A stretch of 64,000 nt of DNA from Ylistrum balloti (Eukaryota): assembly GCF_031769215.1 (NCBI RefSeq), contig NW_026781981.1:806001-870000 (forward strand), written 5' to 3'. Positions 1 to 61,831 of the stretch are shown in pieces. Both the position numbers and the translations under genes were made by a program. The notes under the pieces are model-generated. The model ran no database searches. It worked only from the letters and a program-made list of their open reading frames with translations, and was not told where the DNA came from. How positions within the stretch are numbered: the first letter of the stretch is position 1; each line of letters starts with the position of its first letter.

Positions 1-609
1 AATATGTCCATGCAGATTCTTCAGAAGAGTGCAATAAACATAATTCCGTACACGACGTTTTGATGCATATTGTTTGTTGAATATTTACTTTATATTTGGA
101 AATAAAAACAAATTAAAATGCAAGTTTCATGATGTTGAACTTATCCATGGATATAAATATATGATATAAAGTCCTTTTCGTGGTATACTAAACATTGCAC
201 TTAACACAGTGGGGAACTCTCAAATATGCTGTTACTTATAATATATATACAATGTGCTTTAAATTTTACGTAAGTTATATTTGTTGATATTTATTGGTAG
301 CAATTAAACTTTGACATTGCACAAAAAATCAATCCATTCCGATATGTTTGACAAAACTGATATGTGGTTTTCAAAATACAATTATAGTTCATAATTTTGA
401 AATAACATTATTAGATCAACGTTTTTTTTGTACGTACATATTTTCTAACATGTTATTTCTTTCCACAAAATCGATCTTGTACGAACATAAATATATATAC
501 ATGATTTATACATTAGTTTCTGTAATATTCAAATTTTAAAACAGACGGTAAATTAACTATATATGTTAACGTAAAACAACATATTGCTTGACTTCTTTCA
601 GCCTGTGGG

Positions 610-814
610 ATGAATCGCAGTAAGACAATATGGTGCGTGCTCACCAGTATTGTGTTAATCCTTTCTCATCGCACTAACGGTCAACTGACAGGCGACTTTG
701 CTACTTTTCCGGGTACAGGCAATACTGTCCTCACCACGAATGAGCAGGGGGTTCAAGAACTAGTCAGATACACGCCCTACTTTGTCGAGGATGAGAGCAC
801 GGTTGGTTACACAG
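610..814 (+). CDS. Gene A, coding exon 1 (signal peptide + acidic/Thr-rich segment) of a predicted 149-aa secreted or membrane protein
   Basis: Acceptor ttctttcag ends at 601 and ATG is at 610. The sequence MNRSKTIWCVLTSIVLILSHRTNG resembles a signal peptide. Phase-1 donor ACAG|gtattg at 814/815 joins in frame to 2238. Confidence 0.7.
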
Positions 815-1028
815 GTATTGAAATGGGATGTTGTTTACAAAATACATTAACGTAATGGCACTTTAACAATACAATGCTATGAATAAACGGCTTGTAAACA
901 CCATGGTATGTCTTAAAGGCTCACAAAGAACTGAATACTATAGCGTTAAGACTTACGTTAACTGTTCAATACAACAATTTAAGGACGCTGTTTACACTCT
1001 TTGGGGCAAGATGCATATAACTTACTAG

Positions 1029-1192
1029 ACTAATGTAACATTTATATCACCAATAGTTATCTATTTATTCAATAAGGTATAAAGAAAACCGATGATGCGT
1101 TTTCTTAACAAGATCAAGAAGTAGATGGAAACCTGATGTGAAAAAGGAACTAATGTAACATTTATATCACCAATAGTTATCTACTTATTCAA
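1029..1192. repeat. Two 44-bp direct repeats 120 bp apart (actaatgtaacatttatatcaccaatagttatcta(t/c)ttattcaa)
   Basis: Near-identical copies at 1029-1072 and 1149-1192, inside gene A intron. Confidence 0.85.
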
Positions 1193-1924
1193 ATCCCAGT
1201 ATCACGATTTGTATGATGGTATATTGAATGCTGATGGAAATCTTGCCCTGCAGATTTTTTTGAAAGACGCAGGTTAAAGGAGATTTTATCTTCCCAGGAA
1301 TGAGACCAGATCTCCTCAGTTGCAGTTGTCACCATACCAAACAAATAATAAATAAAATAGATAAATACATGTAATATCAATCTAATACCTTCACGTTTGG
1401 AATTAACTGTAAACGTTCTATTTATAGAAATGATGACATAGTTTATGATTAAGACTCCGTCAGATCTCCGTGAACAGACAATGAAGTGAAATATGAATTT
1501 GTGTTAGATCTGGAGTATCACAATCATTAGGTAGAGCTATGCTGAGTTAAATAAAGTCATAATGTGATAACATCAATGAACCTATACACGTTTCATACAG
1601 ATTGTCTGCATATCTGGAAAACATTTGTCTGTAATCGACATCTATCACGGAAATCATTGACATTATCTAATTAATTGAAATCAAATTTTCCTCTCAAAAC
1701 TGATGTTTCTGATTGATTCCATTAGCTTGTTATGTTTTAACCAAATTCTATTCTATGATTTATTTTTCTGGCTTTTTTTTTTTTTTTTTACAAATTATGA
1801 TAGTTTGCATTTGTCAATTTTTGACACTACAATGCCAATTTTGGTATCACGATTTGTAATTTTTATTGATATTGTCCTATTTCAAATTACGAGAAGTATA
1901 TTTAATACCGTTCCATTTCACAGT

Positions 1925-2200
1925 TCTACTAGTGTTTTACATTATTCTATCTTTACATTGTTCTATTTTACATTATTCTATTTTTACATTGTTTTATTTT
2001 ACATTGTTCTATTTTAAATTGTTCTATTTTTACATTGTTTTATTTTACATTGTTCTATTTTAAAGTGTTCTATTGTTCTATTTTACATTGTTCAATTTTG
2101 AGGTGTTGTATTTTACATTGTTTTGTTCTATTCTACATTGTTCAACATTGTCCTATTTTGTAGTGTTCCATTTAACACTGTTCTTCATGTATTTTTACTT
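1925..2200. repeat. Degenerate ~15-bp minisatellite (ttttacattgttcta-like), intronic
   Basis: Repeated ttttacattgttct/tta units are directly visible. Confidence 0.85.
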
Positions 2201-2237
2201 TGTTGTTAACATGTTTTAAACTGTCCTTTTGCTACAG

Positions 2238-2355
2238 TAACTACACTGTTGCTACTTGGTGTATTGGTCACTGTAATTAACCTGACGTCAGCAAATCAAT
2301 CTGATATGACGGTTGCCATGCTCAGTGCTGGAATGGGCAGCTATCTCGGATATGG
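2238..2355 (+). CDS. Gene A, coding exon 2 (hydrophobic segment VTTLLLLGVLVTVI, then NLTSANQS and MTVAMLSAGMGSYLGY)
   Basis: Acceptor ctgtccttttgctacag|TA at 2237/2238 is in phase with the upstream exon. Donor TATGG|gtacgt at 2355/2356 is phase 2. Confidence 0.65.
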
Positions 2356-2871
2356 GTACGTATCATCGATCCTTTTCCTTTCTTCTCTTATTTTGATTTT
2401 TAACATCCTCGATACAACCAGTGTAGCATAAGTGCGGTTGTGAAGAGGGATGATAAAAGTGGAAAATATAGCAGTGATTGAAAGAGCAGCAGAAAGTCAA
2501 AGAAGGAAGAGATCAAAGTTCAATGTGTTGCTATTGGAAATAGGATATTTGACCAATTCACAGTCCCCTTAGTAGAAACATGAAAGAAAACTAATTTTGC
2601 AGGAGCCCAATTTTTATCTCCTTTGCTGTCACCCAAGTCCAGCACTAGGACTTTGGTGTGCGCAGTGTGTGTTCCAATTACACGAAGTTTGTGTATGTTT
2701 TTTTTTTTTTTTTTTTGAGGGGGGAGGGGCACAAATGTCCACTTCTTGCGAGATAAAACATCGTCATTTAATGTTATATAGAGGTATCTACGGTAACGGT
2801 AAGTGTAGTGATATCCTTCTGTGACCCTTTTCCCGACTATCTGTAATAATGCCATCGATATGTCGTTTTCA

Positions 2872-3100
2872 CGGGAAAGGCTTCTACATTCATCCAAACA
2901 TTTCAGAAATAGGTTTCCGCTTGTTGAAGTCACTGGGAAGGCTTCTTCATTCATCCTAACATTTCATGTATACGTTTCCTATTGTTGGAGTCACTGGGAA
3001 GGCTTCTACATTCATCCAAACATTTCAGGAATAAGTTTTCCGCTTGTTGAAGTCACTAGGAAGGCTTCTACTTTCATCCAAACATTTCAGGATTAAGTTT
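2872..3100. repeat. ~61-bp tandem repeat, about 4 copies (gggaaggcttctacattcatccaaacatttcag...gttgaagtcact)
   Basis: The gcttct anchor recurs at 2880, 2941, 3002 and 3064. Confidence 0.85.
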
Positions 3101-3913
3101 ACTTTTGCTGGAATCAATTGACTGCCAATAGTTGTGTCGAAGCATTTGTTGGTGATATATGCTATCTCAGAAAGTGCATTATGTTGTTGTTGGAACAACA
3201 TCATGGAAAGATATCGGGTCCTGGATCTGGAGATTTACATTCCTTCATCAGGATCTATCCAGACCTTCGCCGGCTACCAATAACTCCGAATATGGTACAT
3301 AGAGCGTGTTGGAGTTGAAAGAGAAACCTCGTCATATGAGAGTTTGAATCAGAACTGTCGATATTCTTAATGCCAGATCTTCAAAGTGTTTGACTTGAAC
3401 TGGTGCCATCAAGGATCCTAGACATTTTTTTCTACAGACCTCTACACAGGTTTCTTTTTCAGTAGTCCGCATTGTGTTTCTCTGATTGTGAATCTCAGGA
3501 CCGTAGTGCATCCTAAGGGTGTTGATCTGTCTCGACACAGTAAAGTGTTTTCATATGCACATTCGGAGTCTACAACAAAATCGATGGTATACTTCGAACC
3601 CTGAACTAGTAGTCATGTATGATCAGACTAAAAAGGGTATAGTCGAATCGATGGTCATGGCTCAATAAGTAAAATCTTACCACCTATCCACTTGCACATA
3701 GGAATTTAATATTATGCCATCTGTATAAATATATGTACCGCGCATTCACGCTTGAAAGGTTATTTGCTCATTGTAGGCTACAGCATCTAGTCATCGAATC
3801 GTATGCACAAATTATCAAACTGTTTACGACATATAAATTTCTATTCAATCTACAGTAAGAAGCTTGCAAAATAAACTTTGACCATACCTGTTATTACATT
3901 TATTATTCAATAG

Positions 3914-4040
3914 TTTTGGAAGGGGAAGAAGGCGAAGAAGAAGGCGAGGAAGAAATAGACCAGGAAGACCAGGTAGACCAGGAAGACCAGGGGCGCCGGG
4001 AGGTCCACAACGCCCCGCCGGTCCCTTCGGCCCGAATTAA
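3914..4040 (+). CDS. Gene A, last coding exon: [15 protein letters not shown](RPG)4[15 protein letters not shown]
   Basis: Acceptor tattattcaatag|T at 3913/3914 matches the phase-2 donor at 2355. It is a GC-rich island in AT-rich DNA, open to TAA at 4038-4040. The three exons sum to 450 nt (149 aa + stop). Confidence 0.65.
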
Positions 4041-5312
4041 ACCCTGGGAAATTAATTCGATTATTCCATCACATTGTTACACCATGAAAACAAATATCGC
4101 TCTGATTAAATCCTTCATCAAATGAAATAGATTGTTACCTTGATGTTTATATATTTCTGAAACAAAAGTTAATTATATACATACTGCAAAAACCTATTGT
4201 ACGATGAAATGTCTGGGTTATGATTAATCTGGTTCAGAAAAGTCAAATGTGTATTATGTTGAGATGAAAAGTAACGAAATGTTCGTATCATGAATTAGAT
4301 GTATTTAAATGTGATTATTTATAATGTACTTGATATTTCTACCGAAAATATTGCCTGTTGTAACAGATTTCTTGAACGATGTTAACTTTGTTGATCACTG
4401 ACTCGTATTTTAAAGCTATGATGAATCGGCATAGCGATAATAAATAGTTTGATATTGTAACGTTTTTCCAGTTTTCCTTTCCGTATTGCATATTCGAATT
4501 ATTATGCTAGTAATTTCAACAAGATACACTGTAAAAAACGTCTCATGGTCAGACCAAATGTGTTATTCTTCGTAACGTAAGGGCTGCAAAGTCTAATGTC
4601 ATTGTTTGATGTCCAATACTTTATACAATATCTCGCTAGGATGATCGAAGCACGTGATGTCGATGCATTGAATGGAATTCTATATAAAGCAGGTCGTTGT
4701 TGTAAGCTTTTGGATATAACATATATGTTTTGCTATCAAACGAGTCAGACATGTTTTTTATTCAGTGATACAAAGTGAAATTGAAATTCATGAAGTGAAT
4801 GATATTTCTTAAATCGTTGGAATCTAATAATTTAGTAACATACATCTAAAATTACAACCAAAATAGATTTTAATGTTTAGTGTTGACGAATTTCTTCATA
4901 AAAAATCTTATAAGGGAAATATTTCTAATTAATATGTAACCCCTTGATTAGTCTCGCTCCTAGTTATGACTCTTAATCACGAACTGCTGAATGACCTACC
5001 CTGGTAATAATACTTGACAGACAACTCCCAGTATTTACTCTACCTTTATCAAACATCTTCGTTTCCTCCTGTTGATCACACCAACAAGACAACTCCCAGT
5101 AAATGCTCTACCTCTATCAAACATTCTATTCTCCGCCTTATGGCAATACTGAAAAGACAATCTACATATTTCCGGTTTATATATTTTTAGAAGACATCAA
5201 CGAATTATTACTTGAGACTTCTACTCTCTTTAGTTTGGTGAGCATAGTAAAGAGACTTTTCCTGATACTTACAGGTACTTTACATTTGTAGATATTTCCG
5301 AGTTACAACACT

Positions 5313-7561: not shown

Positions 7562-8214
7562 CTGAAATATACGTCTCAGATGCATTAAGTCTCAAACACG
7601 AGATAATGAACAGTTCGTAGTTAGATTATACAGCAATACTTGGGCAGGTGACAGGTACGGAAAATGCTAGGAACAAGTAGGTTGTTATAAAATAGGTATT
7701 GATAGATAGTACAAGATATTTAGAAAGGTAATTAAAGACATTATTACGGAGATTAAGTAGTACTTTGATGAGCGCCTGTCAATACAAATTTAGAATTATT
7801 CATAAGTGAAACAGAAATCAACTCTTTCGTATAGATGGCGCTACAGTAGCCAATGTGTTATAACCTTTGGCCTACGTAACCTTAGGCGATGACCCGAAAT
7901 GTATGGTTCGACGCTCCCTACGCTGTTTTTGTCTATCAGAATGATGGGCAACGGACCTGTCTGTGCTGACATGATTGTATTATTTGTGCACGATTCTTGC
8001 CCTTATCGCTAAGGACAGCATGCGTTCAGTGAGGTAGCCACCAATTACTACAATAAGACCCTGGCTGTTCATTTGGCGATAAATACAGCAAAGAAATAAA
8101 CACACATCAAACTGTTTGATGTCTAGGGACTTGTCACACAGCCTAAGAGTCTAAACTGTTGAAACCTAAAAGGTAACTGATCACATTTTTGTTAATACTT
8201 TTTGCAATACTTAC

Positions 8215-8584
8215 ATAGAAGGTACAGATAGTCATCATTTCCAGCATCAGCAGCCGCAGCAATAGCAGCACCAGGGGGTATTCTAGGTACTGGATAGGGT
8301 AAATACACTACCCTGTTTGGTATACCATGTCCTTTTCCTCCGTAACCCTTTCCATATCCATGACCATATCCTCCGTATCCTTTTCCATATCCGCCATATC
8401 CTCCATATCCGCCTTGTCCTCCATATCCACCGAATCCGCCATAACCATACATGTCATATCCTCCTCCATTTCCCCCTATAATGAAGCCATCGTGACCATA
8501 TCCGCCCCCATACTCGCCACCAAGACAGCAACCCACAGATATGAGAATTGTCAGGATCAGCAGAGCTAGGGTGGCAAATTTCAT
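8215..8584 (-). CDS. GY1 main coding exon: secreted Gly/Tyr-rich protein (138 aa spliced), shell-matrix-like composition
   Basis: MKFATLALLILTILISVGCCLG signal peptide, then GGYGGYG/GKGYG repeats, YLPYPVP and AAAA-DAGNDD. Acceptor gtcaacag|AG at 8592/8591; phase-1 donor CTAT|gtaagt at 8215/8214. Confidence 0.9.
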
Positions 8585-10744: not shown

Positions 10745-13700
10745 ATTCTGATGACGTTTTAGGGAAACCAGATAACAGACGCAGAAAACAACTAATTATT
10801 ATGATGACGTTTTCTTGGAGACCAGATAACAGACCCAGAAAACAACTAATTATTATGTTGACATTTCTTGGAGACCAGATAACAGACGCAGAAAACAACT
10901 AATTATTATGATAACGTTTTCTTGGAGACCAGATAACAGACCCAGAAAACAACTAATTATTATGTTGACATTTCTTGGAGACCAGATAACAGACAAAAAC
11001 AACTAATTATTATGTTGACATTTTTTGGAGACCAGATAACAGACAAAAACAACTAATTATTATGTTGACGTTTTTTGGAGACCAGATAACAGACAAAAAC
11101 AACTAATTATTATGATGACGTTTTCTTGGAGACCAGATAACAGACAAAAACAACTAATTATTATGATGACGTTTTCTTGGAGACCAGATAACAGACAAAA
11201 ACAACTAATTATTATGTTGACATTTTTTGGAGACCAGATAACAGACCCAGAAAACAACTAATTATTATGTTGACATTTCTTGGAGACCAGATAACAGACA
11301 AAAACAACTAATTATTATGATAACGTTTTCTTGGAGACCAGATAACAGACCCAGAAAACAACTAATTATTATGTTGACATTTTTTGGAGACCAGATAACA
11401 GACAAAAACAACTAATTATTATGTTGACATTTTTTGGAGACCAGATAACAGACAAAAACAACTAATTATTATGTTGACATTTTTTGGAGACCAGATAACA
11501 GACAAAAACAACTAATTATTATGTTGACAGACAGATAACAGACAAAAACAACTAATTATTATGTTGACATTTTCTTGGAGACCAGATAACAGACAAAAAC
11601 AACTAATTATTATGTTGACATTTTCTTGGAGACCAGATAACAGACAAAAAACAACTAATTATTATGTTGACACAGATAACAGACAAAAACAACTAATTAT
11701 TATGATGACATTTTTTGGAGACGAGATAACAGACAAAAACAACTAATTATTATGTTGACATTTTTTGGAGACCAGATAACAGACAAAAACAACTAATTAT
11801 TATGATGACGTTTTCTTGGAGACAGATAACAGACAAAAACAACAGACAAAAACAACTAATTATTATGTTGACATTTTTTGGAGACCAGATAACAGACAAA
11901 AACAACTAATTATTATGTTGACGTTTTCTTGGAGACCAGATAACAGACAAAAACAACTAATTATTATGATGACATTTTTTGGAGACCAGATAACAGACAA
12001 AAACAACTAATTATTATGTTGACATTTTTTGGAGACCAGATAACAGACAAAAAACAACTAATTATTATGTTGACATTTTTTGGAGACCAGATAACAGACA
12101 AAAACAACTAATTATTATGTTGACATTTTTTGGAGACCAGATAACAGACAAAAACAACTAATTATTATGTTGACATTTTTTGGAGACCAGATAACAGACA
12201 AAAACAACTAATTATTATGTTGAGATAACAGACAAAAACAACTAATTATTATGTTGACATTTTTTGGAGACCAGATAACAGACCCAGAAAACAACTAATT
12301 ATTATGTTGACATTTTTTGGAGACCAGATAACAGACAAAAAACAACTAATTATTATGTTGACATTTTTTGGAGACCAGACAACAGACAAAAACAACTAAT
12401 TATTATGATGACGTTTTCTTGGAGACCAGATAACAGACAAAAACAACTAATTATTATGTTGACATTTTCTTGGAGACCAGATAACAGACAAAAACAACTA
12501 ATTATTATGTTGACATTTTTTGGAGACCAGATAACAGACAAAAACAACTAATTATTATGTTGACGTTTTTTGGAGACCAGATAACAGACAAAAACAACTA
12601 ATTATTATGATGACGTTTTCTTGGAGACCAGATAACAGACAAAAACAACTAATTATTATGTTGACATTTTTTGGAGACCAGATAACAGACAAAAACAACT
12701 AATTATTATGATGACGTTTTCTTGGAGACCAGATAACAGACAAAAACAACTAATTATTATGTTGACATTTTTTGGAGACCAGATAACAGACAAAAACAAC
12801 TAATTATTATGATGTCGTTTTCTTGGAGACCAGATAACAGACAAAAACAACAAAAACAACTAATTATTATAACAGATAACAGACAAAAACAACTAATTAT
12901 TATGTTGACATTTTTTGATAACAGACAAAAACAACTAATTATTATGTTGACATTTTTTGGAGACCAGATAACAGACAAAAACAACTAATTATTATGATGA
13001 CGACAAAAACAACTAATTATTTTTTTGGAGACCAGATAACAGACAAAAACAACTAATTATTATGATGACATTTTTTAGATAACAGACAAAAACAACTAAT
13101 TATTATGATGACATTTTCTTGGAGACCAGATAACAGACAAAAAACAACTAATTATTATGTTGACGTTTTTTGGAGACCAGATAACAGACAAAAACAACTA
13201 ATTATTATGATGACATTTTTTCAGATAACAGACAAAAACAACTTATTATTGGAGACCAGATAACAGACAAAAACAACTAATTATTATGTTGACATTTTTT
13301 GGAGACCAGATAACAGACGCAGAAAACAACTAATTATTATGATGACGTTTTCTTGGAGACCAGATAACAGACAAAAACCAGATAACAGACAAAAACAACT
13401 AATTATTATGTTGACGTTTTATTGGAGACCAGATAACAGACAAAAACAACTAATTATTATGTTGACGTTTTCTTGGAGACCAGATAACAGACAAAAACAA
13501 CTAATTATTATGACAACTAATTATTATGTTGACGTTTTCAGACCAGATAAAGACAAAAACAACTAATTATTATGATGACATTTCTTGGAGACCAGATAAC
13601 AGACAAAAAACAACTAATTATTATGATGACGTTTTCTTGGAGACCAGATAACAGACAAAAACAACTAATTATTATGATGACGTTTTTTGGAGACCAGATA

Positions 13701-15365
13701 ACAGACAAAAACAACTAATTATTATGATGACGTTTTCTTGGAGACCAGATAACAGACAAAAACAACTAATTATTATGATGACGTTTTCTTGGAGACCAGA
13801 TAACAGACAAAAACAACTAATTATTATGATGACGTTTTCTTGGAGACCAGATAACAGACAAAAACAACTAATTATTATGATGACGTTTTCTTGGAGACCA
13901 GATAACAGACAAAAACAACTAATTATTATGATGACGTTTTCTTGGAGACCAGATAACAGACAAAAACAACTAATTATTATGATGACGTTTTCTTGGAGAC
14001 CAGACAACAGACAAAAACAACTAATTGTTATGTTGACATTTTCTTGGAGACCAGATAACAGACAAAAACAACTAATTATTATGATGACGTTTTCTTGGAG
14101 ACCAGATAACAGACAAAAACAACTAATTATTATGTTGACATTTTTTGGAGACCAGATAACAGACAAAAACAACTAATTATTATGTTGACATTTTTTGGAG
14201 ACCAGATAACAGACGCAGAAAACAACTAATTATTATGTTGACATTTTTTGGAGACCAGATAACAGACAAAAACAACTAATTATTATGATGACGTTTTCTT
14301 GGAGACCAGATAACAGACAAAAACAACTAATTGTTATGTTGACATTTTCTTGGAGACCAGATAACAGACAAAAACAACTAATTATTATGATGACATTTTT
14401 GGAGACCAGATAACAGACAAAAACAACTAATTATTATGTTGACATTTTTTGGAGACCAGATAACAGACAAAAAACAACTAATTATTATGTTGACATTTTT
14501 TGGAGACCAGATAACAGACAAAAACAACTAATTATTATGTTGACATTTTTTGGAGACCAGATAACAGACAAAAACAACTAATTATTATGTTGACATTTTT
14601 TGGAGACCAGATAACAGACAAAAACAACTAATTATTATGTTGACATTTTTTGGAGACCAGATAACAGACAAAAACAACTAATTATTATGATGACGTTTTC
14701 TTGGAGACCAGATAACAGACAAAAAACAACTAATTATTATGTTGACATTTTTTGGAGACCAGATAACAGACAAAAACAACTAATTATTATGTTGACATTT
14801 TTTGGAGACCAGATAACAGACAAAAACAACTAATTATTATGTTGACATTTTCTTGGAGACCAGATAACAGACAAAAACAACTAATTATTATGATGACGTT
14901 TTCTTGGAGACCAGATAACAGACAAAAAACAACTAATTATTATGTTGACATTTTTTGGAGACCAGATAACAGACAAAAACAACTAATTATTATGATGACG
15001 TTTTCTTGGAGACCAGATAACAGACAAAAACAACTAATTATTATGATGACGTTTTCTTGGATAACAGACAAAAACAACTAATTATTATGATGACGTTTTT
15101 TGGAGACCAGATAACAGACAAAAACAACTAATTATTATGATGACGTTTTCTTGGAGACCAGATAACAGACAAAAACAACTAATTATTATGTTGACGTTTT
15201 TTGGAGACCAGATAACAGACAAAAACAACTAATTATTATGATGACATTTCTTGGAGACCAGATAACAGACAAAAAACAACTAATTATTATGATGACGTTT
15301 TTTGGAGACCAGATAACAGACAAAAACAACTAATTATTATGTTGACGTTTTTTGGAGACCAGATA
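10745..15365. repeat. 51-bp satellite array, ~4.6 kb (ggagaccagataacagacaaaaacaactaattattatg(a/t)tgac(g/a)tttt(c/t)tt)
   Basis: Continuous tandem units. The 17-aa periodicity of the shadow ORFs (MMTFSWRPDNRQKQLII) confirms a 51-bp unit. Many units have small indels. Confidence 0.95.
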
Positions 15366-15822
15366 ACAGACCCAGAAAACAAATGATTATTATGATGACG
15401 TTTAAAGGAGACCGGATGACAGAAAACAAGTGATCATTATGATGACGTTTAAAGGAGACCGGATAACAGATAGAAAACAAATGATTATTATGATGACGTT
15501 TAAAGGAGACCGGATGACAGATAGAAAACAAATGATTATTATGATGACGTTTAAAGGAGACCGGATAACAGATAGAAAACAAGTGATCATTATGATGACG
15601 TTTAAAGGAGACCGGATGACAGATAGAAAACAAATGATTATTATGATGACGTTTAAAGGAGACCGGATAACAGATAGAAAACAAGTGATCATTATGATGA
15701 CGTTTAAAGGAGACCGGATAACAGATAGAAAACAAGTGATCATTATGATGACGTTTAAAGGAGACCGGATAACAGATAGAAAACAAGTGATCATTATAAT
15801 GACATGTTTTAATAGACCAGAT
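15366..15822. repeat. Variant 51-bp satellite subfamily, about 9 units (atgatgacgtttaaaggagaccggat(a/g)acagatagaaaacaa(a/g)tgat(t/c)att)
   Basis: Units are homologous to the main array but carry fixed differences (tttaaagg, ccgg, gataga). The switch at ~15366 is abrupt. Confidence 0.9.
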
Positions 15823-16644
15823 GTATGGAAATCAAAGCAATAAGAAGCACATCTCAAATTACATAATCAAATAACAATTTATCAAAAATATATTGAAAAT
15901 ATACACAAACAGATGATTTAAGTATTGAAATTAATAATTCTTTACGGACGTACCCCAAATGACATTCAATGTCTAATTTGGAGCATAGTTTCATTTTTAC
16001 AACACAAGTGTAATACTATGATAATTTCTCACATGCCACTGAGCAACTGTAAAGTAACAACGATAAATGAAACGTAAATCTCAATTTGAAATTTACTTTA
16101 CTCTCTTTAACATTTCCCAATCACAGCAGTCTTAATAAAGGCCAAAACACTACCTATATGTAGAATTTGTTGTAGAAACTTATCACGGCACATTTATGTT
16201 TTTCCATTTTATATATATTAATACAAAATCATTATTTAACAGTCAAAGTGTTCAAATCAGGAAAATGTCAACAAACATCACAAAAGTTGAAAAAAAAAAT
16301 GTAGATTTGTAAGATAATATAATTTTTTAAAATCTTTTTGTGAAGCAGCATAACATTTTCCATCATTATAGTAACTTATTAAAATTGGACAGAACAGTTG
16401 CAGAATGAAATGTCGTAAAATGCCTTTTTGGTATACTATTAGATAACGGTTCCTTCGAGCCAAAGTGAAAATTTTCTCTGAGATACAAGGTGACATTTGT
16501 GTATATACACCACTGTCCGTTCTGTTATACTATCAGTTATACAGTGCTGCTTACTTTGATCGATGGACCATTACTGGTTGTAATACCATGTTGCAATTAC
16601 AAACATAGGTTTCCGGGTACATTCATAACTCATCGTAGATCAGG

Positions 16645-17128: not shown

Positions 17129-17453
17129 ATGATGCATCTTAAGTTTGCCCTTTCAACCATAACTCTTGCCCTTGTCCTTGGCTGTTGTCTCGGAGATGGC
17201 TATGGCAGCTATGGAGGGGGATATGACACGTACGGCGGAGCGATGTACGGAGGATATGGTGGTTACGGAAAAGGTTATGGAGGGGGATATAGCGGATATG
17301 GCGGATATGGCAAAGGATACGGAGGGAAAGGATACGGCCATCAAGAAAGGGCTGTGTATATTCCTTACCCTGTACCCGCTGGACCTGCACCAGGATTTGT
17401 AGCAGGAGCCGCCGCAGCAGAGTACAACGACGATAACAGTAATATACTGTTGT
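17129..17453 (+). CDS. GY2 main coding exon: secreted Gly/Tyr-rich protein (126 aa spliced)
   Basis: Acceptor ccttag|GATCAAC then ATG at 17129. Encodes MMHLKFALSTITLALVLGCCLG + GY repeats + YIPYPVPAGPAP + AGAAAAEYNDD. Phase-1 donor TTGT|gtgagt at 17453/17454. Confidence 0.9.
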
Positions 17454-21546: not shown

Positions 21547-21871
21547 ATGAATTATCTTAAGTTTGCCCTTTCGACCATAACTCTTGCCCTTGTCCTTGGC
21601 TGTTGTCTTGGAAATGGCTATGGTGGCTATGGAGGAGGATATGACATGTACGGCGGAGCGATGTATGGAGGATATGGTGGTTACGGAAAAGGCTATGGAG
21701 GGGGATATAGCGGATATGGCGGACATGGCAAAGGATACGGAGGGAAAGGATACGGCCATCAAGAAAGGGCTCTGTATATTCCTTACCCTGTACCCGCTGG
21801 ACCTGCACCAGGATTTGTAGCAGGAGCCGCCGCAGCAGAGTACAACGACGACAACAGTTATCTTTTGTTGT
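21547..21871 (+). CDS. GY3 main coding exon: secreted Gly/Tyr-rich protein (126 aa spliced)
   Basis: Acceptor cttcag|G at 21539/21540 and ATG at 21547 (MNYLKFALSTITLALVLGCCLG). Phase-1 donor at 21871/21872. Close paralog of GY2. Confidence 0.9.
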
Positions 21872-26128: not shown

Positions 26129-26462
26129 ATGTATTATCTTAAGTTTGCCCTTTCGACCATAACTCTTGCCCTTGTCCTTGGCTGTTGTCTTGGAAATGGC
26201 TATGGTGGCTATGGAGGCTATGGAGGAGGATATGACATGTACGGCGGAGCGATGTACGGAGGATATGGTGGTTACGGAAAAGGCTATGGAGGAGGATATG
26301 GCGGATATGGCGGACATGGCAAAGGATACGGAGGGAAAGGACACGGTCATCAAGAAAGAGCTCTGTATATTCCTTACCCTGTACCCGCTGGACCTGCACC
26401 AGGATTTGTAGCAGGAGCCGCCGCAGCAGAGTACAACGACGATAACAGTTATCTTTTGTTGT
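26129..26462 (+). CDS. GY4 main coding exon: secreted Gly/Tyr-rich protein (128 aa spliced)
   Basis: ATG at 26129 (MYYLKFALSTITLALVLGCCLG), with one extra YGG unit relative to GY3. Phase-1 donor TTGT|gtgagt at 26462/26463. Confidence 0.9.
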
Positions 26463-26468
26463 GTGAGT

Positions 26469-26471
<3 letters not shown>

Positions 26472-26556
<85 letters not shown>
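26472..26556. repeat. (CT)n microsatellite, ~42 units, in GY4 intron 2
   Basis: Pure CT run, absent from the homologous introns of GY2 and GY3. Confidence 0.97.
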
Positions 26557-26666: not shown

Positions 26667-26719
26667 TCGGAGGTGCCCTCTTGTTACTGCTGCTGTTGAG
26701 TAATAACAACATTGGATAG
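26667..26719 (+). CDS. GY4 coding exon 3: (F)GGALLLLLLLSNNNIG*
   Basis: Acceptor ttgttattttcag|TC at 26666/26667; TAG at 26717-26719. Confidence 0.85.
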
Positions 26720-31970: not shown

Positions 31971-32204
31971 GGACGATCGCACGGTCCCTGTAGGTCGTAG
32001 ATGGCGGTGGTACCGGAGGCATATTGATATACTGGTAGTCGTAGTTCTGTCCATATCCGCGCTGTAGGCACTGCCGCCATTATAGCCTTTGTTATACATA
32101 TTGTTTCCATATCCACTATATTGGTTAGTATACCCATCGCAATATCCAGTCGCAATACAAAACACCAGAACCAAAAACAGGACTATGACAGTGGCAAACC
32201 TCAT
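31971..32204 (-). pseudogene. GY6 main exon, Gly/Tyr-rich paralog with a 1-nt frameshift at ~32059-32060 (pseudogene or sequence error)
   Basis: Reads MRFATVIVLFLVLVFCIATGYCDGYTNQYSGYGNNMYNKGYNGGSAYS, then AGC-GC-GGA. Restoring one base gives GGYGQNYDYQYINMPPVPPPSTTYRDRAIV and a phase-1 donor C|gtgagt at 31971/31970. Confidence 0.75.
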
Positions 32205-36840: not shown

Positions 36841-37110
36841 CTGAAGCAACAAGAAGAGAAGTCACAAGGATTTTCGACAGTATATTTAATTATTCAAATG
36901 TTTCTCTTTTTTCTTTATCACCGTAGGTCACACTTTTACACAAGTAGCAAAATGACTCCAAATATTATCATTAACAGGGACGAGAAGTTCCGAGACCAAC
37001 CTAACATTGATGTTCAGCCAGTATTCTAAAATAATTATCAGATATTGAAACCTAAAGCTAGCTTTCAGTTAATGATATTTAAAGGCAATTCGTATTATTT
37101 TCATTCTTAC

Positions 37111-37436
37111 CTCCTATAGCTGCAAGAAGCCCTATTCCGGAGCCATAAGGGGAGTCCGTATCCCGTCCCTGAAGTGTGAAGTCAGGAAGAGAAGCACCAG
37201 ACGATGGTAATATTGTCTGTGAATTGTAAGTGATCTGAGTACCTTTTCCGTTGCCACCTTTACCGCCGTATCCCTTGTAGCCAACATTACCACCATATCC
37301 GCTGTAGCTGCCCTTGCCACCGTATCCACTGTAGTAACCGCCTTTGCCACTGTTGCCACCGTAGCCACTGCTACCACCGTATCCAAAGGAGCCACAAACC
37401 ACAACCAGGATGCTGGATAAAATTACTATCCTAAAC
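37111..37436 (-). CDS. GY7 main coding exon: secreted Gly/Tyr/Lys-rich protein (120-129 aa spliced)
   Basis: Acceptor ctcatgtcttag|G at 37437/37436. Encodes (M)FRIVILSSILVVVCGSFG signal peptide + YGG/GGKG repeats. Phase-1 donor GGAG|gtaaga at 37111/37110. Confidence 0.8.
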
Positions 37437-48208: not shown

Positions 48209-48537
48209 CTGCCAAAAGGAAAAAAATGTTGTTGTCGTTGCCGCCGAATGCTCCGCCTCCTCCATACAGTCCTCCGAGTGCTGCCAAAGGAAGATCTCCT
48301 GGTTCTGGGGATGCAACAGGATACAGTATGGTTGGAAAACCATATCCTCCTTGTCCTTGTCCATATCCGCTATATCCGCCATACCCCCCTCCTTTTCCGT
48401 ATCCTCCGTATCCACCATAGTAAGGTGCTACCATACCTCCTTTTCCGTAACCGCTGTACCTACTCATACAATAATGTCGGTGATCAAGAGTATTCGTACA
48501 TACTTTTGTCTAACAATATTAAACCAGTTGTTATGAC
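48209..48537 (-). pseudogene. GY8 main exon: Gly/Tyr-rich body intact, signal-peptide region decayed (pseudogene or leaderless variant starting at ATG 48467)
   Basis: Acceptor ccctatgtcag|GTCA at 48538/48537 is homologous to GY9 cag|GTCA. The first ~70 nt have stops in all frames. The frame is open from 48467 (MSRYSGYGKGG...GNDNNIFFLLA) to the phase-1 donor GCAG|gtaggc at 48209/48208. Confidence 0.7.
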
Positions 48538-53542: not shown

Positions 53543-53921
53543 ATGCGTTTGCTACTCATAGCAATCGCCTCCGGGGCGATCCTCATGGGATTGTTCACGG
53601 CGGTCAATTGTGATGGTGGGTACAGCGGGTACGGGTACGGCGGGTACAATGATTATGACATGTATAGTGGACAAGGGTACGGAGGATATATGTATCCAGG
53701 ATACGGTGGGCAAGGATACGGATATGGTGGAAAAGGATATATAGGATACTCGGGACAGGGATACAGCGGTTACGAAGGAAAGGGAGGAAAAGGTGGTGGC
53801 TATTTTGGCGGTAATGCATTGAGTGTACCTTATGGTCTACGTGTTCCGCCAATCGCCCCACCGCTCGGCTTAGACCAAAGTGGACTCTATGGTGCTAACG
53901 ACTCCTCGCTCTTTACTGTCA
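53543..53921 (+). CDS. GY9 main coding exon: secreted Gly/Tyr-rich protein (145 aa spliced)
   Basis: Acceptor atggcag|GTCACGAG then ATG at 53543. Encodes MRLLLIAIASGAILMGLFTAVNC signal + GYG/GQGY/GGKG repeats + VPPIAPP. Phase-1 donor GTCA|gtaagt at 53921/53922. Confidence 0.9.
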
Positions 53922-60619: not shown

Positions 60620-61831
60620 ATGAACTCCATTACCTTGGTTATATGGATGTGTGTTTGTTTATCTCAAGGTCGACTTTCGAAGACAAAACTTCCAGAAGCT
60701 CGACTACATGATGATATACTCGGTATCAACAAGTACGTTCGACCCGTTTCCGATATCACAAAGCCAGTTAACGTACGTCTGCGACTATTTCTCCTTTCAA
60801 TCATTGAACTAAATGAACGAAAGGGTACCATGTCATCCTCAATATGGTTGGATCTCCGCTGGTTTGATGAACAATTAGCGTGGAACACTAGTAAATACAG
60901 CGGTTTAGAAACCAGTCGTGTACCCTTTACAAGTATATGGACCCCAGATATACTACTTCGCAATGAGATTGGGAACAAAAAGGGAATGAAACATACCAAT
61001 TTTGTAGATCCAACAGTGCGTTATACGGGCGAGGTAATTTGGTGGCCTGGCAAAGAGATAAACACAAAGTGTAAAATTGATACCACTAAATATCCATTTG
61101 ATGAACAAGTGTGTACCCTCTGCGTAGGCAAATGGTATTCAGATGATTCAAAAGTCAACATCACTACGACATCTTCAAAAATTAACATCATGTACTATGA
61201 GGAAAGCGAAGAATGGGAGCTTTTAGATACTTCTGTTGAGCTTGACACACGCCTCGAGGCGCTTTTGGAATTCAGCATTAACTTGTTCAGGGTTAAAATT
61301 AAACGCAGATCAGCATTTTTTATGATGAATATTGTTCTCCCGGTACTGTTAATGTCGTTTTTGAACCAATTGTGTTTTGTTTTGCCTCTAGAAAGTGGAG
61401 AAAAGATCGGTATGTGTATGGCTATCTTCCTGACATTTGCTGTTTTTCTATCGTTAGTAGGCAACTCACTTCCACAGTCTTCGGTCCACATGCCTGCCTA
61501 TTGTGTTTACTTGGTGTTTCAGACAATACTGGGAATCTTGACAATCTCGTCCGAGGTTTTTATATTAAGAGTATATAACAACTCTTGCTGGGATGATTCG
61601 ACATTAAGGAGATTTGCTTTCACTGTCGCCCCATGTCTTGGAATTCCATTAGCTAACAACATTAAAAGTACAGAGGAAGACAATGTTGATTTACCTACAT
61701 GTAAGTCGAAAGGGTATGGTGAGGAAATTTGCCGCAAAGTCGCAATAAAGCTAGACATTGTTTGTGGCTGGGTAATGCTTGCTTGTAACTTGGCGTTTAC
61801 AACTGGGTTTTTCTTCTTCGTGAATACATAA
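60620..61831 (+). CDS. Intronless Cys-loop ligand-gated ion channel subunit, nicotinic acetylcholine receptor-like, non-alpha type (403 aa)
   Basis: Signal peptide, WTPDI loop A, Cys-loop CKIDTTKYPFDEQVC, pre-M1 RR, M1-M2 linker ESGEK, M2 with Leu at 9', four hydrophobic TM segments. No vicinal Cys-Cys in loop C. One uninterrupted ORF with a real ATG. Confidence 0.93.
   Translation: MNSITLVIWMCVCLSQGRLSKTKLPEARLHDDILGINKYVRPVSDITKPVNVRLRLFLLSIIELNERKGTMSSSIWLDLRWFDEQLAWNTSKYSGLETSRVPFTSIWTPDILLRNEIGNKKGMKHTNFVDPTVRYTGEVIWWPGKEINTKCKIDTTKYPFDEQVCTLCVGKWYSDDSKVNITTTSSKINIMYYEESEEWELLDTSVELDTRLEALLEFSINLFRVKIKRRSAFFMMNIVLPVLLMSFLNQLCFVLPLESGEKIGMCMAIFLTFAVFLSLVGNSLPQSSVHMPAYCVYLVFQTILGILTISSEVFILRVYNNSCWDDSTLRRFAFTVAPCLGIPLANNIKSTEEDNVDLPTCKSKGYGEEICRKVAIKLDIVCGWVMLACNLAFTTGFFFFVNT

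What the first reader, a model, noticed from the sequence alone, without database searches (positions are those of the whole stretch)
602..4040. Cryptic three-exon gene encoding a signal-peptide / hydrophobic / poly-Arg-RPG protein
Joining 610-814, 2238-2355 and 3914-4040 keeps the frame through phase-1 and phase-2 introns. It gives 149 aa: MNRSKTIWCVLTSIVLILSHRTNG-QLTGDFATFPGTG...[64 protein letters not shown](RPG)4[15 protein letters not shown]. The ORF track reads the last exon in the wrong frame (EGEEGEEE). Like the GY genes, it has an acidic stretch, then a phase-1 intron, then a hydrophobic segment followed by sequons (NLT, NQS). It may be a distant family member that lacks the GY domain and gained a strongly cationic tail, which could serve in polyanion binding, furin-type release of a cationic peptide or antimicrobial activity (inference).
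Basis: partly seen in the sequence, partly recalled or inferred. Interest (0 to 1): 0.7.

Follow-up and report, generated by a model that had tools for sequence, protein, structure and literature searches.

The report
Small scallop membrane protein gene, three exons
The proposed three-exon gene is real: the Yesso scallop has a matching predicted protein with the same parts in the same order, and it most likely encodes a small membrane-anchored protein of unknown role with an arginine-rich tail inside the cell.

Summary
Observation confirmed. Exons 610-814, 2238-2355 and 3914-4040 have canonical GT/AG borders and keep one frame through a phase-1 and a phase-2 intron. They encode 149 aa: signal peptide, short outer segment, hydrophobic helix, then a tail with 14 Arg in 41 aa.

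The decisive evidence is one relative found in 1.84 billion representative proteins: XP_021351289.1, "uncharacterized protein LOC110449041" of Mizuhopecten yessoensis. It aligns to all three exons in order. Exactly one residue is left over at each junction, matching each split codon. Reading through the second donor gives sequence with no counterpart there.

The locus is single copy in this scallop genome and is the best match of the Yesso protein, so it is probably the orthologue.

Conservation is uneven:
- Exon 2 (helix plus the segment after it): 74% identity.
- Exon 1: 38-46% identity.
- Tail: only the Gly/Arg-rich make-up is kept. The RPG repeats are a species-specific 9-bp tandem repeat.

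Kinship with the neighbouring Gly/Tyr-rich genes is not supported by sequence (hhalign P 0.068). The shared layout is common among bivalve secreted-peptide genes.

The most likely topology puts the tail in the cytosol, which argues against furin release or an antimicrobial role.

This is an ordinary, lineage-restricted gene of unknown function.

The parts
592..601 (+). Acceptor-like pyrimidine run ending in AG, 8 nt before the ATG. It may be the end of a 5'UTR intron. Alternatively, a TATATAT at 558 may serve as a promoter element.
   Evidence: Read directly from the sequence. Inferred only. The Yesso model has 38 extra N-terminal residues that have no counterpart in 15.7 kb upstream here.
610..814 (+). 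Coding exon 1: start codon, signal peptide and short outer segment with conserved motifs (F-x-T-F-P-G-T; Q-E-L-V-[RK]-Y-T-P-Y). It ends in an acidic stretch and the first residues of the membrane helix.
   Evidence: Translation. 38% identity to P0003 residues 39-126, E 1e-14. 31 invariant columns. Single copy in the genome.
610..681 (+). Predicted signal peptide, residues 1-24: basic n-region, 13-residue hydrophobic core, and Thr at -3 and Gly at -1 before a conserved Gln.
   Evidence: Rule-based reading. M1, R3, K5, T6, W8 and the G-Q at the predicted cut are conserved in P0003. AF2 places a helix at 4-18 of the Yesso homologue, at low confidence.
815..2237 (+). Intron 1, phase 1, 1423 nt, GT..AG. 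It contains a 15-nt minisatellite at 1935-2122.
2238..2355 (+). Coding exon 2: a Leu-rich membrane helix, then the best-conserved segment of the protein (T-S-A-N-Q-S-D-M-T-V-x-M-L-S-x-G-M-G-x-Y-L-G-Y).
   Evidence: Translation. 74% identity over all 38 residues and 78% over the last 27 to P0003 130-167. Hydrophobicity. Single copy.
2356..3913 (+). Intron 2, phase 2, 1558 nt, GT..AG. It contains a 61-nt tandem repeat at 2869-3100.
3914..4040 (+). Coding exon 3: F-G, then a Gly/Arg-rich tail (14 Arg in 41 aa, no acidic residue), four R-P-G repeats, a Pro/Gly-rich end, and stop TAA at 4038-4040.
   Evidence: Translation. The start aligns to P0003 169-191. Single copy as DNA.
3925..3991 (+). Two short tandem DNA repeats inside exon 3 (12 bp x 2.5 and 9 bp x 3.9) that encode the poly-Arg and RPG runs.
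   Evidence: Slippage in such repeats would explain why tail length and repeats differ from the Yesso protein while the composition is kept (inference).
4105..4110 (+). ATTAAA, a candidate polyadenylation signal 65 nt after the stop.
   Evidence: Not proven to be used.
4439..4444 (+). AATAAA, a second candidate polyadenylation signal about 400 nt after the stop.
   Evidence: Not proven to be used.

Best explanation
This is a real, single-copy, three-coding-exon gene. It is the probable orthologue of Mizuhopecten yessoensis LOC110449041.

It encodes a 149-aa single-pass type I membrane protein with these parts, in order:
- A cleaved signal peptide (1-24).
- A 45-residue outer segment.
- One Leu-rich membrane helix that spans the exon 1/2 junction.
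- A strongly conserved Gly-rich segment just after the membrane.
- A Gly/Arg-rich polybasic tail on the cytosolic side.

Shown: the exons, the junctions, the conservation pattern and the single-copy status.

Inferred: the topology. Also inferred is that the conserved helix-plus-juxtamembrane module is the functional core, perhaps through helix packing by its G-x-x-x-G / G-x-G-x-G pattern. In this reading the tail acts as a positive-inside anchor that could bind acidic lipids or RNA. The tail drifts in length by repeat slippage while staying Gly/Arg-rich.
For: - The big HMMER search with exon 1 found one true relative, P0003, identified as XP_021351289.1.
- Exon 1 aligns to residues 39-126, exon 2 to 131-167, and exon 3 to 169-191. 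One residue is left at each junction for each split codon (I129 opposite Val, G168 opposite Gly).
- Read-through after 2355 has no counterpart at that position.
- Searching P0003 back against this genome hits only these exons. Profile searches find no paralogue.
- The exons are GC-rich islands.
- Polyadenylation signals follow exon 3.
- The Hessa-scale sum of the Yesso helix is -0.76 over 19 residues. By a hand sum on the same scale, not a tool result, the second hydrophobic segment is about +5.5, too polar to insert on its own.
- The tail carries 14 Arg and no acidic residue.
Against: - There is no transcript evidence for this species. No protein containing exon 1 exists in the 15-billion-protein collection apart from the Yesso model.
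- The Yesso protein is itself a computed RefSeq model.
- In this species the helix is marginal. My hand sum on the Hessa scale for the 19 residues across the junction is about +0.9.
- The AF2 model is of low confidence (pLDDT 51). It shows a second helix at 115-131 that could form a hairpin and place the tail outside.
- Function is unknown: no Pfam, PDB or Atlas lead.
Confidence: 0.72

Rival explanations
1. Two-exon gene. Exon 2 is not spliced at 2355 but reads on to the TAA at 2429-2431. This gives a second hydrophobic C-terminal stretch, like the terminal hydrophobic exon of the neighbouring GY genes. Exon 3 would then not be part of this gene, or only of a minor isoform.
For: All seven GY neighbours examined end in the exon after their phase-1 intron. 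The read-through frame stays open for 25 more codons and is hydrophobic.
Against: The Yesso protein continues after G-Y-G with F-G and a Gly/Arg run. That matches exon 3, not the read-through. The donor GTACGT is good. No AATAAA or ATTAAA lies within 1.4 kb after 2431.
Confidence: 0.08
2. Secreted or surface precursor of a cationic peptide. The tail is lumenal or extracellular (hairpin of two helices, or shedding) and is cut at the Arg run to release an Arg/Pro-rich antimicrobial or polyanion-binding peptide.
For: A signal peptide is present. The tail has 14 Arg with R-P-G repeats. Arg/Pro-rich linear antimicrobial peptides exist in bivalves (PMC5577615). AF2 draws a second helix after the first (low confidence).
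Against: The precursor layout is the reverse of myticalins, which run signal peptide, cationic peptide, Lys-Arg site, anionic extension, with no membrane helix. The second segment is too polar to span the membrane alone. A +14 tail is strongly disfavoured for translocation. The RPG repeats are absent from the Yesso protein, which has poly-Gly there. The conserved part is the membrane module, not the tail.
Confidence: 0.1
3. Divergent member of the neighbouring Gly/Tyr-rich gene family that lost the GY repeats and gained a tail.
For: It lies 4 kb from the first of eight GY genes. It shares a phase-1 intron just before the hydrophobic exon. It shares a Y-x-P-Y-x-V motif followed by an acidic stretch. 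The Yesso protein has a short Gly-rich run after its signal peptide.
Against: hhalign gives P 0.068 and probability 0.8% over 12 columns. tblastn of the exons against the window gives only chance-level hits to the GY genes. The same gene layout occurs in unrelated bivalve peptide genes. This rival concerns origin, not function, and is compatible with the best explanation.
Confidence: 0.25
4. Exon 3 is really a collagen-like exon of a gene on the minus strand, whose frame reads eight Gly-X-Y triplets.
For: One minus-strand frame over 3962-4033 reads perfect G-X-Y triplets. The weak hits of exon 3 elsewhere in the genome cover only its Pro/Gly-rich part at about 50% identity. I take them to be collagen-like, but did not inspect those loci.
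Against: Codon pairs CCN-GGN read Pro-Gly on both strands, so this is expected from symmetry. No neighbouring Gly-X-Y exons were seen in the ORF list. The plus-strand phase and the F-G plus Arg-run start match the Yesso protein exactly.
Confidence: 0.02

Closest known systems
XP_021351289.1, uncharacterized protein LOC110449041, Mizuhopecten yessoensis (RefSeq model, 230 aa)
   Same: Same order of parts: signal peptide, outer motifs, Leu-rich helix, the T-S-A-N-Q-S-D-M-T-V...Y-L-G-Y-G-F-G segment, then a Gly/Arg-rich tail. It is colinear across both exon junctions.
   Different: The Yesso model has 38 extra N-terminal residues, probably an upstream in-frame exon or UTR. It has 22 more residues in the outer segment. 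It has poly-Gly instead of RPG repeats, and an unrelated 40-residue C-terminal end. Overall identity is modest outside exon 2.
Neighbouring Gly/Tyr-rich (GY) secreted protein genes of this window
   Same: Signal peptide. A Y-x-P-Y-x-V motif followed by an acidic stretch. A phase-1 intron immediately before a Leu-rich hydrophobic exon that is followed by Asn-rich residues. Same chromosomal neighbourhood.
   Different: No GY repeat domain. No significant sequence similarity. The GY proteins stop a few residues after the hydrophobic run, whereas this protein continues with a conserved segment and a polybasic tail from a third exon.
Myticalins, linear cationic Pro/Arg-rich antimicrobial peptides of mussels (PMC5577615)
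   Same: Small bivalve gene with a signal peptide, a phase-1 intron and possibly a 5'UTR intron just before the ATG. An Arg/Pro-rich cationic stretch. A hypervariable cationic part beside better-conserved parts.
   Different: In myticalins the cationic peptide follows the signal peptide directly. It ends at a Lys-Arg site followed by an anionic extension, and there is no membrane helix. Here the cationic part is C-terminal, behind a membrane helix. No sequence similarity was sought or found.
RGG / glycine-arginine-rich (GAR) low-complexity regions, from general knowledge
   Same: The Yesso tail (G-R-G-R-R-R-G-R-G-G-G-R-G-G...) and the start of this tail have the composition of such regions.
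   Different: Those regions are known from soluble nuclear RNA-binding proteins, not from tails of signal-peptide-bearing membrane proteins.

Membership tests
LOC110449041-like proteins (unnamed, so far two scallop species) | Significant sequence similarity over the N-terminal exon | tested here: met
   E 1.3e-4 against 1.84 billion proteins. Pairwise E 1e-14, 38% identity. 31 invariant columns.
LOC110449041-like proteins (unnamed, so far two scallop species) | Conserved helix plus juxtamembrane segment | tested here: met
   74% identity over 38 residues, 28 invariant columns.
LOC110449041-like proteins (unnamed, so far two scallop species) | F-G followed by a Gly/Arg-rich tail directly after G-Y-G, colinear across the splice junction | tested here: met
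   Exon 3 residues 1-23 align to P0003 169-191, with one residue left for the split codon.
LOC110449041-like proteins (unnamed, so far two scallop species) | Reciprocal best match and single copy (orthology) | tested here: met
   P0003 hits only these exons in this genome. Profiles find no paralogue. Synteny in the Yesso genome could not be checked.
GY (Gly/Tyr-rich) gene cluster of this window | Gly/Tyr repeat domain after the signal peptide | tested here: not met
   Exon 1 has no GY repeats. Compare the GY genes.
GY (Gly/Tyr-rich) gene cluster of this window | Significant profile similarity of the segment before the intron | tested here: not met
   hhalign P 0.068, probability 0.8%, 12 columns.
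GY (Gly/Tyr-rich) gene cluster of this window | Phase-1 intron between an acidic stretch and a Leu-rich hydrophobic exon | tested here: met
   Seven of seven GY genes examined and the candidate have it. The feature is not specific to this family.
GY (Gly/Tyr-rich) gene cluster of this window | Protein ends a few Asn-rich residues after the hydrophobic run | tested here: not met
   The candidate continues for about 60 more residues and uses a third exon.
Myticalin-type linear cationic antimicrobial peptide precursors | Cationic mature peptide directly after the signal peptide, then a Lys-Arg site and an anionic C-terminal extension | tested here: not met
   The order here is signal peptide, weakly acidic segment, membrane helix, cationic tail. 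The family definition is from PMC5577615.
FXYD ion-transport regulators (Pfam PF02038), considered because of a P-Y-F-V-E-D motif before the helix and a basic run after it | Match to the Pfam model | tested here: not met
   No Pfam family at E up to 10 for the full-length Yesso homologue, nor for the exons at E up to 1.
Collagen-like (minus strand of exon 3) | Long Gly-X-Y run carried by several exons | tested here: not met
   Only eight triplets, explained by codon symmetry. No neighbouring Gly-X-Y exons.

The most novel reading that the evidence does not exclude
This is a scallop-restricted orphan membrane protein whose polyarginine / Gly-Arg tail is encoded by unstable short tandem repeats. 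The tail is exposed outside the cell, through a two-helix hairpin or after cleavage. There it would act as a membrane-tethered or released polycation, for example binding polyanions of shell or mucus matrix made by the neighbouring GY genes, or killing microbes.
Probability: 0.08. Interest if true: 0.55.

Novelty: new member of a known kind. Interest (0 to 1): 0.27.

Why it matters
The result shows that a reader working from raw sequence alone recovered a correct three-exon model of a small gene. Protein collections hold this gene for only one other species, and only as "uncharacterized".

For scallop genomics it adds a second member to an unnamed orphan family. It also defines what is conserved: the membrane helix and the Gly-rich segment after it, not the striking Arg/RPG tail. 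That tells an experimenter where to look for function.

It does not touch a long-standing open question. There is no evidence of an unusual mechanism.

Tried and rejected
- **Word search.** Exon 1 was searched inside its 87-codon open frame so that proteins up to 152 aa were eligible. Nothing was found.
- **Word searches with the Yesso protein.** The whole conserved part and the core alone found only the protein itself. Poly-Gly words saturated the first of these.
- **Other hits of the big search.** P0001 is a 2619-aa repetitive protein whose repeat unit matches across the signal-peptide core. P0002 is a 1194-aa Cys-rich repeat protein. I judged both spurious.
- **Family, structure and literature libraries.** Pfam on the exons, the GY genes and the Yesso protein gave nothing. 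The PDB sequence search gave nothing meaningful. ESM Atlas features scored 0.81 or below, which is chance level. Searches of papers for LOC110449041 and XP_021351289 gave no paper. Two searches on scallop Gly/Tyr-rich proteins gave nothing specific.
- **Yesso genomic locus.** The look-up of encoding contigs for P0003 had no record, so the Yesso gene structure, synteny and dN/dS could not be examined.
- **Upstream and tail of the Yesso model.** tblastn of its extra N-terminal 38 residues and its C-terminal 40 residues, against 15.7 kb upstream and against the window, gave only chance hits.
- **Structure.** Single-sequence AF2 of P0003:39-200 had pLDDT 51. It was used only as a weak indication of helices.
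- **Left out as instructed.** The joined 149-aa spliced model was not searched, folded or aligned. All work was exon by exon, by reference. GY proteins were also not joined across their introns.
- **Complex prediction.** None was run, because no binding claim is made.
Full report
**What is in the sequence**

The window is AT-rich animal DNA. Earlier notes of this scan call the genome a scallop, and the only relative found is from a scallop.

The three proposed exons are there as described:
- Exon 1, 610-814, ends ACAG|GTATTG.
- Exon 2, 2238-2355, follows a pyrimidine-rich tract and ctacAG, and ends ATGG|GTACGT.
- Exon 3, 3914-4040, follows ttattcaatAG and stops at TAA 4038-4040.

The introns are phase 1 and phase 2. 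The split codons are G|TA (Val) and GG|T (Gly), and the product is 68+1+38+1+41 = 149 residues.

The exons stand out in base composition: GC 0.48, 0.45 and 0.59, against 0.29 and 0.38 in the introns and 0.27 and 0.31 in the flanks.

**Is it more than chance?**

An open frame of 87 codons alone is not remarkable in 64 kb of such DNA. Homology settles the question.

Family scans and the word search left the protein open, so I ran the exhaustive HMMER search with exon 1. It found three proteins at E up to 0.001. Two are long repeat proteins that match through the signal-peptide core or a short low-complexity stretch, and I reject them.

The third, P0003, is XP_021351289.1, "uncharacterized protein LOC110449041" of Mizuhopecten yessoensis, 230 aa. 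It aligns to all three exons in order:
- Residues 39-126 align to exon 1: 38% identity with two gaps, pairwise E 1e-14.
- Residues 131-167 align to exon 2. Identity is 74% over the 38-residue alignment of residues 130-167 and 78% over the last 27.
- Residues 169-191 align to the first 23 residues of exon 3.

The coordinates leave exactly one Yesso residue for each split codon. I129 lies opposite the Val codon and G168 opposite the Gly codon. Both junctions are therefore confirmed to the residue, without my joining the exons.

Reading through the second donor gives a hydrophobic stretch that has no counterpart after G-Y-G in the Yesso protein. Across the whole window, only 5 of about 6150 AG sites open a stop-free phase-2 frame with at least 8 Arg in 15 residues. 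The match of phase, F-G start and Arg run is therefore not accidental.

**Copy number and orthology**

No exon has a paralogue in the 648-Mb assembly, whether searched as protein, as a two-species profile, or (for exon 3) as DNA. The Yesso protein searched back against this genome hits exons 2 and 1 of this locus and then only chance-level matches. The two genes are probably orthologues.

Two further word searches seeded from the conserved core found no other member among proteins of 127-402 aa. In the collections reachable here the family has one annotated member, and no product of this locus is on record.

**Anatomy of the protein**

- **Signal peptide, residues 1-24.** It has a basic start, a 13-residue hydrophobic core, and Thr at -3 and Gly at -1 before a Gln. 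The Met, Arg3, Lys5, Thr6, Trp8 and the Gly-Gln at the cut are conserved. This also argues that this Met is the true start and that the 38 extra residues of the Yesso model are an upstream in-frame artefact. Those residues have no counterpart in 15.7 kb upstream here.
- **Outer segment.** It keeps two motifs, F-x-T-F-P-G-T and Q-E-L-V-[RK]-Y-T-P-Y-[FY]-V, followed by acidic residues.
- **Membrane helix.** A Leu-rich helix follows. In the Yesso protein its 19-residue Hessa-scale sum is -0.76. In this species my hand sum across the junction is about +0.9, which is marginal.
- **Conserved segment.** The best-conserved stretch comes next: T-S-A-N-Q-S-D-M-T-V-x-M-L-S-x-G-M-G-x-Y-L-G-Y-G-F-G. It has G-x-x-x-G and G-x-G-x-G spacing. 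By my hand sum it is too polar (about +5.5) to span a membrane alone.
- **Tail.** It has 14 Arg and no acidic residue in 41 positions.

**Topology and the tail**

A cleaved signal peptide, one helix and a +14 tail give a type I topology with the tail in the cytosol, by the positive-inside rule (established knowledge; inferred here). On that reading the NLT and NQS sequons lie on the cytosolic side and would not be glycosylated. NLT is also not conserved.

The AF2 model of the Yesso protein is of low confidence (pLDDT 51). It shows helices at the signal peptide, before the membrane, at the membrane helix and at the conserved segment. It cannot decide between one helix and a hairpin.

The tail is encoded by a 12-bp repeat (2.5 copies) and a 9-bp repeat (3.9 copies). 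The Yesso tail has the same F-G start and a Gly/Arg make-up, but runs into poly-Gly and has no RPG units. What is kept is composition and frame, not sequence. This is what repeat slippage under a loose constraint would give (inference).

The reverse strand of the RPG region reads as Gly-X-Y triplets. That follows from the symmetry of CCN-GGN codon pairs, and I reject a collagen exon.

**Relation to the GY genes**

The window holds eight genes for Gly/Tyr-rich secreted proteins. I traced seven of them, and they share these features:
- An AG-ending pyrimidine tract a few bases before the ATG in several of them.
- One large exon that ends in an Asn/Asp-rich stretch.
- A phase-1 GTGAGT or GTAAGT donor.
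- A last exon that encodes a Leu-rich run and a few Asn-rich residues before the stop.

The candidate shares the phase-1 intron position, the acceptor-like site before the ATG, and a Y-x-P-Y-x-V motif. But profile-profile comparison aligns only 12 columns with P 0.068, and tblastn gives chance-level scores.

The same layout is published for mussel myticalin genes: a 5'UTR intron right before the ATG, a phase-1 intron, and a last exon (PMC5577615). Layout is therefore weak evidence. I rate common origin at about one in four. It is not established.

**Function**

No library gives a lead and no paper names the Yesso gene.

I commit to a small type I membrane protein whose conserved helix-plus-juxtamembrane module is the working part and whose polybasic tail sits on the cytosolic face.

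The precursor order is also the reverse of the known bivalve Arg/Pro-rich peptides.

**Ends of the gene**

ATTAAA at 4105 and AATAAA at 4439 follow the stop. No such signal lies within 1.4 kb after the read-through stop.

The 5' end is open. Either there is a short UTR from a TATATAT at 558, or an upstream non-coding exon is spliced to the AG at 600-601.

**Verdict**

GY kinship and the proposed activities are not supported.

It is a new member of an uncharacterized, apparently scallop-restricted family. It is ordinary in kind, and of modest interest.

Noticed in passing
window 8192-8584(-), 17129-17452(+), 21547-21870(+), 26129-26461(+), 31971-32204(-), 37109-37402(-), 48210-48467(-), 53543-53920(+): A cluster of eight genes for Gly/Tyr-rich secreted proteins. 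In the seven traced, a phase-1 intron separates an Asn/Asp-rich end from a last exon (seen for five) that encodes a Leu-rich run plus a few Asn-rich residues and a stop, for example 26667-26719. Small residues, then a polar spacer, then a terminal hydrophobic run: this looks like a GPI-anchor signal or a membrane anchor with almost no tail. No Pfam match.
   Followed up: partly
window 60620-61831 (+): An intronless 403-aa open frame with neurotransmitter-gated ion-channel ligand-binding and membrane domains (Pfam PF02931 E 1e-41, PF02932 E 3e-13). This is a Cys-loop receptor gene without introns in its coding part.
   Followed up: partly
window 13672-14176 and 15337-15857: Two long tandem arrays whose repeat unit keeps frames open on both strands for 137-166 codons. 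This looks like satellite DNA rather than genes.
   Followed up: no
window 26470-26555: A long (CT)n microsatellite fills the start of the intron of the GY gene at 26129. It lets the mechanical ORF run on through the intron into the last exon.
   Followed up: no
window 1935-2122 and 2869-3100: The introns of the gene hold a 15-nt minisatellite (12.8 copies) and a 61-nt tandem repeat (3.8 copies). There is also a duplicated stretch of about 45 nt at 1029-1072 and 1151-1192 (read).
   Followed up: no
L010 1947-2165 (+), i.e. about 3.4 kb upstream of the window start: A 72-aa open frame with a hydrophobic start and seven Cys, possibly an exon of a small Cys-rich secreted protein.
   Followed up: no
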